Origin: Paramoeba atlantica
Lineage: Eukaryota > Protista > Discosea
Assembly (NCBI GenBank): GCA_977017575.1
Contig: CDRNVI010000032.1
Location: forward strand, 62,001 to 126,000
DNA: 64,000 bases
Direction of reading: 5' to 3'
Position 1 is the first letter of the stretch. Every line of letters starts with the position of its first letter. The notes under the pieces were generated by a model, which was not told the origin of the DNA, did not search any database, and was given only the letters and a program-made list of their open reading frames with translations. Position numbers and translations under genes: made by a program. Below are positions 56,693 to 61,578 of this stretch, in pieces.

Positions 56693-57821
56693 ACGATCCC
56701 GGCCGATCCCACCGGTCCTGGTTGAATTTACGTGGAAGAAAAGATTTGGTGAAAACGCGAGTTCTAGAAATTCGACGAAAGAAAGAGCAACTATTTTTGA
56801 GGAAACTCATTCAATTGTTAAAAATCAAAAACAATGTGCATATGAAGGTACTGACCACCCCACTTAAACGCACCCAGGTTTTGGCCTAAAATTGCGCATA
56901 AATAGCCCCATAAAAAGGGGTGAAAAAAATTTTTTGCGACGCTTCGCGGCGCGTGTTTCTATCATGAGTTATATACGCGGGGTACCCTTCGGGGCTGCTT
57001 TTTATATACTATCCCCCCTAGCAATCCGCTTTCTGCTTTTGGACTTGTTCCCCCTTCTTCCTCTACGGTCCTCCAAAGTCGATATCAAAAGCGATGTCCC
57101 ATTCTTCTGACACGGATCGTTGCATGTATAAGAATGTGGCGCGATAGTGTCTGAGGTACATGAATGGGTTGGAACCGCAGCCATTCCAAAAGCCAAAGTT
57201 TCGGATGTATTCAGCGTGAAGTTAGAAGTTTTTATCAAGGGTCGTCAAGATACCTGCGATAAAGACAGCAAGGAAGCCCTGTAAAACAGACTTAGACTGA
57301 TGTACAGTAAAGTATGCAGACTCGCCGTACAGATCGGTGGAGGTCAGTGTGGATCAGAGGAGATCTCTAGAGATCGATGAAGATAATTCTCGAACTCCCC
57401 AAAGGGACTACCTGCAGACTCTCCATTTCAACAGCGGTGAAAATCTGTACAAAAATTCGTACCCCCCAAAAAAATGCCCGCCGCTTTGCGGCGCTGTTAT
57501 TCTGAACGATGCGTCAAAATTGCGCTTAAGTGGCCGGGTCAAACGGTTGCGCATAAGTAGAGGGGGGGGGGACAGTAGGAGAAACTAAACAAAAAGTGGA
57601 ATCTTTACGGTGGAATCTCCCTTTTTTCCCCCAATTTTTGTTTCTAAAAAAATACTCCAATGCTTTTTCGAGTTCAGCGATTTTACAATCCTTCTAGATT
57701 GGTATTGGCGAAAGAGAAGACTTTGACTTAGAGGGCTAAAACGATCCCGGCCGATCCCACCGGTCCTGGTAGAATTTACGTGGAAGAAAAGACTTGGTGA
57801 AAACGCAAGTTCTAGAAATTC
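56693..57821 (+). repeat. 81-bp direct repeat pair (56693-56773 and 57741-57821)
   Basis: acgatcccggccgatcccaccggtcctgg...gttctagaaattc occurs twice with 3 mismatches. Each copy is preceded by acttagagggct. Confidence 0.9.
56851..57575. mobile_element. MITE with CTG(A/T)CCCC termini, TA-flanked
   Basis: Left ta|ctgaccaccccacttaaacgcacc; right ggttgcgcataagtagaggggggggggacag|ta. Subterminal aaaattgcgc(a/t)taa and cgctt(c/t)gcggcgc motifs. Confidence 0.65.
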
Positions 57822-58250
57822 TCAGCTAGGACAATAAATAAACCAAGCATACGACCAGTTGCCATAGGGGAAGTGCTAATGAAATTGGCTGGGTGCATTC
57901 TCGTTCAAAGATATGAAAATATGCTGGGAACACTTTTCGTACCACTACAGCATGGCGTGCTCTCGAAAGCAGGTTGCAAACGATTCGTTCACACACTAAA
58001 TGAGGGAGTTGCTATGCCCTGTCCATGGTATCATGTTCAGGGGAACATCAACTCCCCATTATCTCGGCGTAGTAAACACGCCTTGGCTTGCCTGGCACTA
58101 CGATTGCCGAAAAAAATATATTTTCGGTTCATTTCGCAGCCCAGTCGCTTCCCACTTAAGGGGCCCGCTCCCACAACCGAGTGATCTCCCCGGCAGCTCG
58201 GTTTTACTCATGCGTCGAGAAGGCTGGGGTGTGAGACCAGGGTGCATTTA
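57822..58250 (+). pseudogene. Degenerate reverse-transcriptase fragment of a CRE/SLACS/CZAR-clade non-LTR retrotransposon
   Basis: Extending ORF 57873 upstream gives KPSIRPVAIGEVLMKLAGCIL....LGTLFVPLQHGVLSKAGCKRFVHTL (cf. IRPIAVGE.LRRL...L.P.Q.GV...GG.E..VH). A downstream frame has GVRPGC (cf. GVRQG). Confidence 0.7.
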
Positions 58251-58476
58251 TAGAAAATTTTCGGAAGAAGAAATACGAAGGAAATTTTACTGCATAATGG
58301 AGTAGAAAACTTTGAGTGCAATAGAACAAAGGGTTGGCGTAAACCTTTGGTTAACGTTTTTTCTTTTGGGGGGGGGATTTACTTTCTTTGCCATTCCTCA
58401 TGCTATCCACTCATAAATTTTACTAATTACTCTAGATTCGTGTGTTTGTTTCCTCCAGTTACGCTTTCTATAATTC

Positions 58477-59061
58477 TTACATAGGGTCTACATGTACATC
58501 GCCAGCTCTTAGAGCTGAGTTCAGGAGTGCTTCTTTTATGTCATAATTATGCTCTTCTCGAGTCAACCCGTCCGCTGGGTTTTCTTTAGATTTAATATGG
58601 AAAATTCGAAAAGAATGTCCATGTTTCCCTATCTGTCCATGCATTTCCGTGATCTCATTACACATCGATCTCCTAACTGATGTACGCCCCGATTCTGATG
58701 GTATTTCACTCTGGTGAAACCAGTGTCGCATATCAGCGGATAAAAAGTTTACGTTGGGGAAATTTTCTATTACATGGATAATTTCAGCGATAGCTGGAAA
58801 ATTCAAGCAAGGAGGGCGATTGCACATCTCATTTAGTGGTGTTCCATCCGCAATACTTCTTGACAATTCCTCCCCTTTTGATGCCTCGAAGTAACGTAAA
58901 TATAAACGTGATGATGATCGAGAGTCGTGTGCCACACGTAGCACCCCGCATTCCACGAGTTCTAATAAATGTTGTAACCAAACCCCGGAGGCTAGTTTCC
59001 TTATTTTCCCGTGAAAAGGGGGACAATTTATCCATTCAATAAAATTTTGGGTACTTTTCAA
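58477..59061 (-). pseudogene. Internally deleted RT-RNase H of a DIRS/Ngaro-type (VIPER/TATE-like) retroelement
   Basis: YFEASKGEELSRSIADGTPLNEMC.RPP.LNFP.I..I......NFLSADMRHWFHQ (RT domains 1-3) is joined in frame to FRIFHIKSKENPADGLTR (RNase H C-terminus). The YxDD region is missing. Confidence 0.75.
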
Positions 59062-59324
59062 TGCCGTGCAACATTTGATACCCCATGGTAAACCATGTTT
59101 TAGGTGTGTTGATGTAAAGAAACCAAGTTGCTCCTTCAGTATTTATGATGAATCTTCGTTAACAAAGAATATATCGGGTATAAATGCATCAAGCAAAGCA
59201 ACCGTTTGCTTTTTTTTTCTAGTTTTCTTTTTTCTCTCTCCACCGAATAAGCACTAACGCGTTCACTATCGTCGGTCTGAATTTCTGATTCAATATTCCT
59301 ACTAGGCGAGATATCCTGAAAAGC

Positions 59325-59592
59325 CGTATTCCGAGCGTCAACCCGAGATGTCCGGTGTGTGCCTCGATACTTCCGTATGGGGGGATCTATAACGCACCAA
59401 CAATACTCCCCCCCTTTGTTTTCTCTCCCCCGAACACTCCATATTTTTCAACTTCATATTCGTATTCCGAGCGTCAACCCGAGACGTCCGGTGTGTGCCT
59501 CGATACTTCCATATGGGGGGATCTATAACGCACCAACATTACTCCCCCCCTTTGTTTTCTCGCCCCCGAACACTCCATATTTTTCAACTTCA
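59325..59592 (+). repeat. 136-bp tandem duplication (2 copies)
   Basis: cgtattccgagcgtcaacccgaga...ttttcaacttca at 59325 and 59461, with few differences. Confidence 0.92.
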
Positions 59593-59770
59593 AATCTTCT
59601 TAGGGGGTAGGACTCCCGTTACCATGCCTCAAGTGAGGATTAAGGAACTAAGGTTTTTTTTTTCGGAAATCGTAGTGCCAGGCAAGCCAAGGCGTGTTTA
59701 CTACGCCGAGATAATGGGGGGTCGCTGTTCCCCTGAACATGATACCATGGACAGGGCATAGCAACTCCCT

Positions 59771-60519
59771 CATTATCACTCCTTCGTAAGCACCATGTTA
59801 CCGGGACCAAGCCCTAGGTGCCAGGCATGCCATAGCACGTCACAACTTCCCACCCTCTCCCTTCTGTTTTTATTCTGTTTTCACTTCATTAAAAAAACAT
59901 GCTGGAGAGGAGGATGTATAGCGCAAATGGAACAGCAAGTGTGCACCGAAGGACACGGAGCCCATGGGCCTCCCAGCACGAATGCTGGGGCGGTGGTACC
60001 CCGAAGGGTACGGAGCCCATGGGCCTCGTTACAGAGGATGTATAAATGCAACGGCAAGTGTGCCCCGAAGGACACGGAGCCCATGGGCCTCCCAGTACGA
60101 ATGCTGGGGCGGTGGTACCCCGAAGGGTACGGAGCCCATGGGCCTCGTTACAGAGGATGTATAAATGCAACGGCAAGTGTGCCCCGAAGGACACGGAGCC
60201 CATGGGCCTCCCAGCACGACTGCTGGGGCAGTGATACCCGAAGGGTACGGAGCCCATGGGCCTTGTTACAGATGATGAAGTACTGCCAGGCCGGGACCAA
60301 GCGAATTGATGCGTGACATTTTCAGGCGTGTATGATTGTTTAGTTAAATGTTTAGCTAAATGTAGCAGTTATACTGGATACTAGAAACAAGTAGTTCAAT
60401 TATATTTAGTTTATAATCGTGCTATAGATGTGTTGAAATCTTCACCCTCAGACTCCGCCGAATATGGCGGTGCCGGGCTTGGGACCGGTAACAAGCGTGT
60501 TTACGAAGGAGTGATAATG
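59771..60519. mobile_element. 749-bp element with about 45-bp imperfect TIRs enclosing a tandem hairpin array
   Basis: 59771 cattatcactccttcgtaagcaccatgttaccgggaccaagccc versus the reverse complement of 60475-60519, cattatcactccttcgtaaacacgcttgttaccggtcccaagccc. No clear TSD. Confidence 0.7.
59910..60280. repeat. Three 119-bp tandem units, each with two cgaagg..acggagcccatgggcc cores and three hairpins (UUCG loops on the minus strand)
   Basis: cgaagg at 59947, 60066 and 60185 (period 119). Minus-strand hairpins gtaccc-ttcg-gggtac, gtgtcc-ttcg-gggcac and cccagca-ttcg-tgctggg. Confidence 0.92.
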
Positions 60520-60695
60520 TTAAAAAATAATGGGTAACCGGAACTATAAATGTAGGTTAAAATCCATTTTTTTCTGATGATTTTTTTCCGCTCGAAAAAA
60601 CTTTTACGTGGCTTTTTAAAACGTTTCCACTCGTACTCATGACGTTCCAACTTATATTTCAATGCTTGGAATACTCAATGGACCGCCCAGGATAT

Positions 60696-60760
60696 ACTAC
60701 ATTGGTCTACTACATGTACATGTAGTACATGTAGTACTACTACATGTACATTGGTCTACT
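60696..60760. repeat. Palindromic TACATGTA/CTA simple repeat flanked by tacattggtctact direct repeats
   Basis: tactacattggtctactacatgtacatgtagtacatgtagtactactacatgtacattggtctact. Confidence 0.85.
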
Positions 60761-61439
60761 TGGTATTGGTGACCTGTAAAAAGGATAAGGTGCGCTCCCA
60801 GGCGCTCCAGGACACTCCCATCCAGTTTGAACCCTCTTGGAAGCCACCACGGCTACTCCCTTCGCGTTGAGAACTGCTTCAGCGTTTAATGAAGGGACTA
60901 AAAAGGAAAAAATTGCGAAACGGTCCAGAATAATCCAACTTTTGGTACAAATACCCGATTCTCCCCATATTTCGTATTCTCCCCATATTTCGGACGTTTT
61001 TTGGGGTCTTACCATTAGAGGTAGGGGGCACATCTGATCGAAAAAACGTGTGGTCTGGTAAGTAAGCAAAAAGAAAAAATAAGAAAAGAGATCAACGAAA
61101 GATCAAAACCTTTTTCCTGAGTCCTTTTGGGAAAGATTGTTCAAACAAATTTTACTTGTTTTCAACCTACATTTATAGTGCCGGTGAACCAAAATAATTT
61201 ACAAGCAGTCTCCTTTTTAGAACAACTTCACTTTTAGTCATTTTCTGTTTCTTTTAACGAATCGTAACTACAATATGCAAATGCACAGAATCGTCAAACA
61301 TGTTGCATCCCATCCCATCCCATCCCCCCCCGCACTTACCGAGGACACGAAGGTGAGGAACAGTTTGAAGACGGCACCGATTAGAAGATGACTCACGAAA
61401 CATAAGTACACAACATAAATGCTAAGAAGCACAGATGCT

Positions 61440-61578
61440 ATCCGCGCCGCGAAGCTGCGCGACTTTTTTTTATTTTTTTTGTCCGAAATATCTTTTCCCC
61501 TTGAGATATTTCTGACCAGGCTCCTTAAGCGCAATTTTCGGCCAAAACCCGGTTGCGCTTAAGTGGGGGGGGGGGCAG
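61440..61578. mobile_element. Right terminus of the same MITE family as 56851 (inverted copy of that left end)
   Basis: cgcgccgcgaagc...cttaagcgcaattttcggccaaaacccggttgcgcttaagtgggggggggggcag|ta is the reverse complement of 56851-56955. Further related ta|ctgt(c/g)cccc ends lie at about 61607 and 61667. Confidence 0.65.

What the first reader, a model, noticed from the sequence alone, without database searches (positions are those of the whole stretch)
59771..60519. TIR-bounded array of 119-nt units packed with UUCG-tetraloop hairpins: candidate structured RNA or retrozyme-like element
Seen: three head-to-tail 119-bp units. On the minus (polycistron) strand each has gtaccc-UUCG-gggtac, gtgtcc-UUCG-gggcac and cccagca-UUCG-tgctggg hairpins, separated by two copies of the near-palindrome gaggcccatgggctc. 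The second hairpin closes fully only on the minus strand (G.U wobble versus a C/A mismatch). One variant changes only a loop base, while another variant favours the + strand. The array is enclosed by about 45-bp TIRs without an obvious TSD. At 60284-60302 there is a permuted copy (tgccaggc-cgggaccaagc) of sequence at the left TIR boundary (ccgggaccaagc..tgccaggc). Knowledge: C(UUCG)G is the exceptionally stable RNA tetraloop, and tandem monomers arise from rolling reverse transcription of small circular RNAs (retrozymes). Inference: a non-autonomous element whose RNA or ssDNA intermediate is highly structured, possibly mobilised by the neighbouring DIRS/VIPER-type machinery.
Basis: partly seen in the sequence, partly recalled or inferred. 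Interest (0 to 1): 0.75.

Follow-up and report, generated by a model that had tools for sequence, protein, structure and literature searches.

The report
Hairpin minisatellite inside twister-headed retroelement
The three 119-base repeats are an unstable minisatellite in the leader of a 2.5-kb defective jumping gene of the tyrosine-recombinase kind. Its "right inverted repeat" holds a twister self-cutting RNA motif, and its "left inverted repeat" is half of an internal mirror copy of the element's own joined ends.

Summary
There are three 119-bp units, UUCG hairpins and about 45-bp inverted repeats at the stated coordinates.

- **Extent.** At every complete site the repeat runs from window 57999 to 60519. 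It is read on the minus strand.
- **5' end.** The end at 60519 carries a twister-like ribozyme motif. The predicted cut lies 17 nt inside the element.
- **Left "TIR".** Together with the 116 nt beside it, this repeat is the exact reverse complement of the element's 3'-end/5'-end junction. That is a DIRS-type internal complementary region.
- **Tail.** It holds a reverse-transcriptase/RNase H reading frame with about 315 codons deleted, so the copy is non-autonomous.
- **Mobility.** An empty site elsewhere in the genome lacks the whole 2.9-kb unit.
- **Array.** Unit number runs from 1 to about 23 across 10 insertion sites. It differs between duplicated copies of the same site, so it changes after insertion.
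- **No support for three ideas.** I found no ribozyme in the units, no strand-specific conservation of the hairpins, and no sign of rolling-circle origin.

Other agents of this scan have already described the twister-plus-splint layout on other copies in this genome. I found no paper describing it.

The parts
57999..60519 (-). Whole non-autonomous retroelement (2,521 bp). The RNA sense is the minus strand: 5' end at 60519, 3' end at 57999.
   Evidence: The same two boundaries recur at independent sites with unrelated flanks. An empty site on contig C59 lacks the whole unit.
60503..60519 (-). 17 nt upstream of the predicted twister cleavage site (U17/A18). The first 4 nt, CATT, are the shared core also found at the 3' end.
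   Evidence: Rfam alignment places the conserved U-AA at this point. T and T' are identical for nt 1-19 and differ at 7 positions after that, in all young copies.
60436..60512 (-). Twister-like ribozyme motif with P1, P2, P4, P5 and the T1/T2 pseudoknots. It has no P3.
   Evidence: RF03160 scores 28 bits, E 0.0045, at 60441-60507, below the gathering score of 67.2. The core CCGGUCCCAAGCCCGG and GAGGG are matched. Pairs covary with a second twister type at L057:3659-3738. Own model R1 hits 60436-60512.
60470..60519 (-).
60278..60435 (-). Unique leader between twister and array.
   Evidence: The segment is conserved in 77%-identical single-unit relatives L048-L050.
59925..60277 (-). Minisatellite of three 119-nt units. 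Each unit is a dimer of roughly 55-64-nt sub-units with UUCG hairpins.
59821..59924 (-). Unique leader between the array and the internal complementary region.
59655..59820 (+). Internal complementary region. Read on the plus strand it is the circle junction: the 3'-end copy A (59655-59770), then the 5'-end copy T' (59771-59820, the 'left TIR'). The two share a single CATT.
59325..59592 (.). 136-bp tandem duplication in the tail. Other copies of the family carry a single unit.
   Evidence: Alignments to other copies break at 59459/59461.
58477..59142 (-). Remnant RT/RNase H reading frame (221 codons) with about 315 codons deleted from its middle.
   Evidence: Residues 15-148 align to 52-183, and 153-221 to 499-566, of a 567-aa RVT_1+RVT_3 protein. 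Own-genome relatives at 50-53% identity lie inside 482-587-aa frames.
57999..58116 (-). A': the 3' terminal segment, an inverted copy of A. It ends in CTCCCT + CATT.
58057..58098 (-). Degenerate inverted copy of the 5' head inside the 3' region (vestigial ITR).
   Evidence: The direct-repeat pairs D3 and D6, mirrored through A/A'.

Best explanation
The finding is the 5' leader of a 2.52-kb internally deleted, non-autonomous retroelement of the tyrosine-recombinase (DIRS-type) kind, read on the minus strand. Shown: the element's ends; an internal region that is the exact reverse complement of the joined 3' and 5' ends; a twister-shaped motif 12 nt inside the 5' end; a gutted RT/RNase H frame; insertion without target duplication next to a CA-N-T core; and an empty site. 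Inferred: the element is transcribed as part of a longer RNA. The twister cuts after nt 17 and so defines the RNA 5' end. After reverse transcription by proteins supplied in trans, the internal complementary region bridges the cDNA ends and templates the lost 17 nt. The resulting circle is then integrated by a tyrosine recombinase crossing over in the 4-nt core. The 119-nt array is a leader module carrying two cUUCGg hairpins. That module is single-copy in older relatives and has been amplified here. It now behaves as a minisatellite that gains and loses units by slippage or unequal exchange after insertion. I rate any function of the hairpins (for example binding the element's Gag) as possible but unsupported.
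For: Boundaries: the left flank of the 'left TIR' is the same in 9 of 9 complete copies while right flanks differ. Homology to other copies runs from 57999/58001 to 60519. 3' ends at 7 sites read CTCCCT + CA(G/A/T)T followed by unrelated DNA. 5' ends read CATTATCAC after unrelated DNA.
ICR: plus strand 59655-59820 matches the last 116 nt plus the first 45 nt of the element, with one shared CATT. T and T' are identical for nt 1-19, then carry 7 differences fixed in all young copies. The predicted cut is after nt 17.
Twister: Rfam gives 28 bits, E 0.0045, with all upper-case consensus positions matched. A second type in L057 changes all 5 P1 pairs and the whole P5 stem, and turns the T2 pseudoknot from CCC/GGG into CCA/UGG, while keeping pairing. 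94.7% of cells are paired and 8 pairs changed on both sides, against 1.0 in shuffles and 1-2 in slid controls. The genome holds at least 47 sub-threshold RF03160 matches, the best at 39 bits.
Coding: RT N-terminus fused to RNase H C-terminus. On contigs C16 and C29 the order on one strand is related twister head, then about 2.7 kb, then a Phage_integrase match, then the RT/RH homologue.
Mobility: the two flanks of the C26 copy abut on C59 with a 2-nt overlap, and the 2.9-kb unit is absent there.
Array: at least 128 units at 10 sites. Unit number is 3 vs 2, 10.5 vs 6, 11.5 vs 5.6, 22.7 vs 12.3 and 2 vs 1 within duplicated site pairs. Higher-order 123+123+68 patterns occur, with a chimeric hairpin. 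A single-copy unit sits in 77%-identical relatives.
Against: The twister match is far below Rfam's gathering score (28 vs 67.2 bits). It lacks P3. The window copy has a C-C mismatch in P2 that other copies do not have. Rfam did not report twister-P1 for the better-paired C21 copy in two runs, so detection depends on the filters. The covariation rests on one comparison between two twister types. Cleavage, circular intermediates and trans-mobilisation were not observed. No recombinase or Gag is in this copy. VIPER-like elements are reported to have split direct repeats, not an inverted ICR (PMC6681497).
Confidence: 0.8

Rival explanations
1. A MITE-like non-autonomous DNA transposon, 59771-60519, bounded by 45-bp TIRs and carrying an internal satellite.
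For: The 45-nt inverted repeat is real. Many DNA transposons carry internal tandem repeats (own knowledge).
Against: The outer flank of the left arm is conserved in every copy. No copy has the 749-bp piece alone. There is no TSD. The left arm plus its neighbour equals the reverse complement of the true end junction. The empty site lacks the full 2.9 kb.
Confidence: 0.02
2. A retrozyme-like element: the 119-nt unit is a small circular RNA, and rolling reverse transcription of it made the tandem copies.
For: Units are head-to-tail and fold stably, at -56.6 kcal/mol and z -4.2 on the minus strand. A ribozyme motif exists in the same element.
Against: No ribozyme family matches the units on either strand at E<=10. 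The twister is single and lies outside the array. Unit number differs between duplicated copies of one insertion. Chimeric 68-nt units and 55-64-nt sub-periods fit unequal exchange. The unit is embedded as a single copy in the leader of older relatives.
Confidence: 0.03
3. The hairpin modules are selected cis-acting RNA signals, for example binding sites for the element's Gag or RT. Extra copies would help a defective element compete for proteins supplied in trans. This rival concerns the array only and is compatible with the main explanation.
For: The cUUCGg loops face the strand that the twister independently marks as RNA. A single unit has a well-defined minus-strand fold, with 0.41 of the ensemble against 0.02 for the plus strand. 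Hairpin 1 with its 5' CUCC is invariant over 19 nt in relatives that are 77% identical overall. One compensatory A-U to G-C change lies in the closing stem.
Against: There are no compensatory changes among 31 unique monomers. One-sided changes favour the sense strand 8 times and the antisense strand 11 times. On the diverged alignment, the count of pairs changed on both sides equals the shuffled mean (1 vs 1.0). Hairpin 3 and both palindromes are not kept. Copies with 1-2 units have also inserted. A 19-nt invariant run is not improbable at this divergence (my estimate, p about 0.2).
Confidence: 0.2
4. The twister resemblance is a relic or chance. The element would be a DIRS-type retroelement whose RNA 5' end is set by something else, such as a promoter or trans-splicing.
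For: The Rfam score is sub-threshold and detection was inconsistent. The window copy has a P2 mismatch and the C67/C185 copies carry a core mutation.
Against: The full core is conserved and stems covary between two types. Dozens of similar motifs occur in this genome. The motif holds a fixed position 12 nt inside the element end at all sites. The T/T' identity breaks right after the predicted cut.
Confidence: 0.1

Closest known systems
DIRS1-type tyrosine-recombinase retrotransposons (ITRs plus internal complementary region)
   Same: An internal region complementary to the outermost 5' and 3' sequences placed side by side. Insertion without a target duplication. RT/RNase H coding. A recombinase gene in related full-length copies. 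The background description is in PMC6681497.
   Different: The ICR lies in the 5' leader, about 700 nt from the start, rather than near the 3' end. The ITRs are reduced to a degenerate roughly 40-nt trace. A twister motif sits at the 5' end. This copy lacks Gag and recombinase and has a gutted RT.
VIPER / TATE (VIPER-like elements of kinetoplastids) and their short derivative SIRE
   Same: The host genome has one-strand, intronless gene clusters. The order recombinase-then-RT/RH is seen in relatives. Short non-autonomous derivatives share the ends of the long element.
   Different: VIPER-like elements are reported with split direct repeats, and that paper makes no mention of a ribozyme (PMC6681497). 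Here the repeats are inverted. Phylogenetic placement of the RT was not tested.
[quoted passage not shown]
   Same: A twister at the 5' end of a retroelement, co-transcribed with it and proposed to free the element RNA.
   Different: That element is a non-LTR element integrating by target-primed reverse transcription with TSDs, and its P1 stem partly comes from the TSD. Here the element is recombinase-type, and the bases upstream of the cut are kept as an internal spare.
HDV-like ribozymes at the 5' end of L1Tc/NARTc and R2 elements (own knowledge, not checked here)
   Same: The same logic of ribozyme-defined 5' ends for retroelements that lack their own promoter in read-through transcription.
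   Different: A different ribozyme class and a different retroelement class. HDV-like ribozymes cut at their own 5' edge, so nothing needs to be restored.
Retrozymes (PMC4918200)
   Same: Non-autonomous retroelements that carry a small self-cleaving ribozyme and rely on proteins supplied in trans.
   Different: Retrozymes carry hammerheads in flanking direct repeats and make circular RNAs. Here there is one twister, no flanking direct repeats, and no evidence of an RNA circle.
Minisatellites and satellites seeded inside transposable elements (own knowledge)
   Same: Tandem amplification of an internal TE segment, copy-number polymorphism, higher-order units, and long arrays that have lost one element end (C34, C28/C37).
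   Different: None in principle. The array is an ordinary example of this behaviour, apart from its hairpin content.

Membership tests
DIRS-type YR retrotransposon | Internal complementary region matching both outer termini side by side | tested here: met
   59655-59820 (+) equals the 3' terminal 116 nt plus the 5' terminal 45 nt with one shared CATT.
DIRS-type YR retrotransposon | Long inverted terminal repeats | tested here: not met
   Only a degenerate roughly 40-nt inverted trace of the head lies inside the 3' region.
DIRS-type YR retrotransposon | RT/RNase H coding region | tested here: met
   A remnant frame aligns to the two ends of a 567-aa RVT_1+RVT_3 protein, with about 315 aa deleted in between.
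DIRS-type YR retrotransposon | Tyrosine recombinase gene | tested here: inconclusive
   Absent from this copy. On C16 and C29 a PF00589 match lies between a related twister head and the RT/RH homologue on the same strand. The sequences could not be fetched.
DIRS-type YR retrotransposon | Integration without target-site duplication | tested here: met
   The 5' side always reads CATT. The 3' side reads CAGT, CAAT or CATT. Flanks abut at the C59 empty site with a 2-nt overlap.
VIPER-like | Split direct repeats at the ends | tested here: not met
   The repeats are inverted, not direct. The feature is as described in PMC6681497.
VIPER-like | RT and YR cluster with VIPER/TATE in trees | not tested
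   No named reference sequences were available.
Twister ribozyme (type P1) | Rfam RF03160 gathering score | tested here: not met
   28 bits against 67.2. The model expects a P3 hairpin, which is absent here.
Twister ribozyme (type P1) | P1, P2 and P4 stems, T1/T2 pseudoknots and the conserved core (UAA, GC, CCGGUCCCAAGCCCGG, GAGGG) | tested here: met
   94.7% of cells are paired, and a compensatory change lies in T2.
Twister ribozyme (type P1) | Self-cleavage | not testable with these tools
   Needs an in vitro or in vivo assay.
MITE / TIR DNA transposon | TIRs at the true ends, plus a TSD | tested here: not met
   The left arm is internal to the repeat and there is no TSD.
Retrozyme | Hammerhead ribozymes in flanking direct repeats, and a circular RNA | tested here: not met
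   No hammerhead at E<=10 in 57500-61300 and no flanking direct repeats. The circular RNA is not testable here.
Minisatellite | Head-to-tail units with copy-number polymorphism at one locus | tested here: met

The most novel reading that the evidence does not exclude
The cUUCGg hairpin modules are the element's cis-acting recognition signal for its trans-supplied proteins, and a defective element multiplies them to out-compete its autonomous parent. This would sit on top of an undescribed replication scheme in which twister cleavage and ICR-templated repair of the lost 17 nt are obligatorily coupled.
Probability: 0.15. Interest if true: 0.75.

Novelty: new variant of a known kind. Interest (0 to 1): 0.6.

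Why it matters
First, it corrects a tempting misreading. An apparent TIR element with a structured-RNA array is in fact the leader of a recombinase retroelement.

Second, the layout gives a concrete, testable account of two things: how a promoter-less retroelement in a read-through-transcribed genome defines its RNA 5' end, and why an internal complementary region must cover that end. A ribozyme removes 17 nt, and the splint carries the only perfectly maintained spare copy.

My searches found a twister at the head of a non-LTR element (PMC8501958). They found no paper linking any ribozyme to DIRS/VIPER-type elements.

Third, the array shows a satellite being born from a retroelement leader. 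Arrays of about 23 units have already lost one element end.

Tried and rejected
- **Rfam at gathering thresholds over the whole window:** nothing. Only the permissive scan showed the twister.
- **Rfam on three other copies:** no twister-P1 in an 8-kb call and only a partial Twister-P5 in a 401-nt call. I treat this as filter dependence, not as evidence against the fold.
- **Own covariance model R1:** it found only its training sequences in 233 kb. The T' copies do not match it.
- **Pfam on neighbouring ORFs:** HMG-CoA reductase, LRR proteins and NFACT-C, and no mobile-element machinery. Pfam on the remnant ORF itself was blank even at E<=10.
- **ORFs beside the second twister in L057:** no Pfam hit.
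- **Orientation relative to neighbouring ORFs:** mixed among copies, so there is no orientation rule.
- **Covariation of the unit hairpins:** none within the family, and not above controls against diverged relatives.
- **Names or organism from cluster look-up:** none.
- **Long ORFs across arrays:** 173 aa here and up to 921 aa in C34. These are artefacts of the repeat.

Full report
**Observation.** The stretch 59925-60277 is a tandem array with a 119-bp period, 3.0 copies and 95% matches (family D1). The arms 59771-59793/60497-60519 and 59796-59814/60475-60493 are inverted repeats. Aligned as one, they match at 38 of 45 positions with one gap. Each unit, read on the minus strand, has two cUUCGg hairpins, a third UUCG hairpin and two CCCATGGG near-palindromes. 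The array folds better than dinucleotide shuffles on both strands (z -6.1 minus, -4.7 plus). A single unit folds at -56.6 kcal/mol (z -4.2) on the minus strand. There one structure takes 0.41 of the ensemble, against 0.02 on the plus strand at -52.9 kcal/mol (z -2.6).

**Genome context.** The window belongs to a 45.7-Mb assembly in 248 contigs. Of the 28 ORFs of 250 aa or more in the window, 24 lie on the minus strand. The four on the plus strand all overlap longer minus-strand ORFs. This is the pattern of a kinetoplastid-like protist. I did not identify the organism. The unit is multicopy, with at least 128 matches at about 17 places.

**True boundaries.** When the complete copies are lined up, the DNA right of 60519 differs from site to site. 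The DNA left of 59771 is the same in 9 of 9 copies. Homology to other copies runs on leftwards to 57999-58001. There, seven sites end in CTCCCT plus CA(G/A/T)T followed by unrelated DNA. The repeat is therefore 57999-60519. No site carries the 749-bp piece alone. In the C30 copy the two parts are separated by a 12.5-kb nested insertion, but both are present.

**Ribozyme.** A permissive Rfam scan of 57500-61300 gives one credible hit: twister-P1 at 60441-60507 on the minus strand, 28 bits, E 0.0045.
- This is far below the gathering score of 67.2. However, the model expects a P3 hairpin that is absent here.
- Every upper-case consensus position is matched: UAA, GC, CCGGUCCCAAGCCCGG and GAGGG. 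An 18-nt insertion forms a 5-bp hairpin where the optional P5 stem belongs.
- A second, diverged twister-like motif lies in a held locus (L057:3659-3738). Against it, all five P1 pairs and the whole P5 stem are different yet paired. The T2 pseudoknot changes from CCC/GGG to CCA/UGG.
- On the ten-sequence alignment, 94.7% of cells pair and 8 pairs change on both sides. Shuffles give 1.0 and slid controls give 1-2. This is effectively one independent comparison, so it is supportive rather than conclusive.
- The genome holds at least 47 sub-threshold RF03160 matches, up to 39 bits.
- Caveats: the window copy has a C-C mismatch in P2 that most copies lack. Rfam failed to report twister-P1 for the C21 copy in two runs.

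**Internal complementary region.** With the minus strand as RNA sense, the element reads 5'-T (60519-60470, with the twister) - leader - array - leader - T' (59820-59771) - A (59770-59655) - tail - A' (58116-57999)-3'. T' is the inverted copy of T, and A' is the inverted copy of A. Read on the plus strand, A followed by T' is therefore exactly the sequence that would arise by joining the element's 3' end to its 5' end...CTCCCT-CATT-ATCAC..., with a single CATT. That is the definition of a DIRS-type internal complementary region (described in PMC6681497).

One detail ties it to the ribozyme. The predicted cut is after nt 17 (between 60503 and 60502). T and T' are identical for nt 1-19, then differ at 7 positions that are the same in all young copies. 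This is expected if the first 17 nt are re-copied from the ICR in each cycle while the rest is inherited through the RNA. The T' copies do not match my twister model.

**Coding remnant.** The tail holds a 221-codon frame on the RNA-sense strand (58477-59142).
- Pfam sees nothing in it.
- An exhaustive profile search finds 169 relatives. The long ones carry RVT_1, and one also carries RVT_3.
- Residues 15-148 align to 52-183, and residues 153-221 to 499-566, of a 567-aa relative. About 315 residues are missing, including most of the RT core and the RNase H-like domain.
- Within this genome the same two pieces match, at 50-53% identity, positions about 1.1-1.3 kb apart, some of them inside single 587-aa frames.
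- On contigs C16 and C29 the order on one strand is: a head 88% identical to ours over its first 48 nt (C16) or an RF03160 match (C29), then about 2.7 kb, then a Phage_integrase match, then the RT/RH homologue.

This copy is thus a deletion derivative that must rely on proteins made elsewhere. No RT or recombinase match lies elsewhere in the window.

**Mobility and integration.** The C26 copy has an empty counterpart. Its 5' flank maps to C59:255289-256290 and its 3' flank maps up to C59:255290. The two flanks therefore abut with a 2-nt overlap, and the 2.9-kb unit is absent. The alignment of the 5'-side query starts at its third base. This fits an empty site that carries the 3'-side version of the core (CAGT) rather than CATT. 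I could not read the C59 sequence. The 5' side is always CATT while the 3' side varies, which argues against a target duplication. It fits crossing-over within a short core, as expected of a tyrosine recombinase. That last step is inference.

**The array.**
- The 17 places reduce to 10 insertion sites. Six pairs share flanks, as haplotigs or recent duplications, and C28/C37 look like a seventh pair.
- Within pairs the unit number is 3 vs 2, 10.5 vs 6, 11.5 vs 5.6, 22.7 vs 12.3 and 2 vs 1, and equal in two pairs. The array therefore changes length after insertion.
- Units are 119-123 nt. Long arrays show 123+123+68 higher-order patterns. The 68-nt unit carries a chimeric hairpin made of the 5' arm of hairpin 1 and the 3' arm of hairpin 2. 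TRF also sees 55-64-nt sub-periods. All of this is typical of slippage and unequal exchange.
The module is therefore older than the array.

**Are the hairpins selected?**
- Among 31 unique monomers there is no compensatory change. One-sided changes are compatible with the sense strand only 8 times and with the antisense strand only 11 times.
- Against the diverged relatives, hairpin 1 is fully kept and hairpin 2 mostly kept. Hairpin 3 and both palindromes are lost. One A-U to G-C compensatory change lies in the stem that closes the unit. The counts do not exceed shuffled controls.
- The evidence does not show selection for RNA structure, and the sample is too shallow to exclude it.

**Literature and earlier notes.** My searches found twister variants at the 5' end of the non-LTR element Perere-3 (PMC8501958). 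They found no paper joining a ribozyme with DIRS/VIPER-type elements or an ICR. The survey of VIPER and TATE does not mention ribozymes and reports split direct repeats (PMC6681497).

Other agents of this scan have described the same layout on other DNA of this genome. That includes a 'UUCG-hairpin array between inward-facing twister motifs' resolved as a 2.9-kb defective element, which is probably another copy of this family. Note s1-369742 prompted my permissive Rfam scan. I re-derived the boundaries, ICR, coding remnant, empty site and array behaviour independently here.

**Limits.** A majority line of the 119-nt satellite unit was used only to index columns.

**Verdict.** The object is a non-autonomous, twister-headed, DIRS-type retroelement whose leader carries an unstable hairpin minisatellite. 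I put the architecture at 0.8. Ribozyme activity and ICR-templated repair are well-motivated inferences. A function for the array is unproven.

Noticed in passing
window 60522-61205: Directly abutting the element's 5' end is a different repeat of about 680 bp, with about 40-nt inverted ends and at least 16 copies at 86-92% identity. It contains the palindrome cluster at 60698-60760. No ribozyme match was found in it.
   Followed up: partly
window 61191-61500: A third repeat family, with at least 9 copies at 91-95% identity, begins where the 680-bp repeat ends. The region is a nest of mobile elements.
   Followed up: no
window 60291-60302 and 59803-59814 (minus strand): The 12-mer GCUUGGUCCCGG occurs twice in RNA sense, flanking the array. 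It is complementary to the twister core CCGGUCCCAAGC except for a central 2-nt mismatch, and it is conserved in 77%-identical relatives. It could sequester the ribozyme core; this is untested.
   Followed up: partly
L057:3659-3738 and L057:4276-4727: A second, diverged twister-like motif (28.6 bits) lies inside the 12.5-kb insertion that splits the C30 copy. It is followed about 540 nt downstream by a (TTAG)x113 microsatellite. ORFs nearby have no Pfam match.
   Followed up: partly
L054:8515-8621 (C26 3' flank): A repeat of about 110 nt, present in C26 but absent from the C59 counterpart, has at least 40 copies at 85-95% identity across the genome. It is a SINE-like or MITE-like short element.
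   Followed up: no
L063:876-961: A perfect hairpin with 29-bp arms gives equal sub-threshold hits to a plant microRNA family on both strands. It is a palindrome, not a microRNA.
   Followed up: no
L045 (C34) array; window 59795-60316: Because 123 = 3 x 41, long arrays open spurious ORFs of up to 921 aa in several frames. The window's 173-aa and 122-aa ORFs over the array are artefacts of the same kind.
   Followed up: yes
L032:900-1300 versus window 57500-61300: Rfam reported twister-P1 for the window copy but not for the better-paired C21 copy, which got only a partial Twister-P5 hit at 17.9 bits. Detection of these P3-less twisters depends on search filters, so genome counts are lower bounds.
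   Followed up: partly
window 59325-59592: A 136-bp tandem duplication lies in the element's tail. Several other copies have one unit only. This is a second length-variable repeat in the same element.
   Followed up: partly
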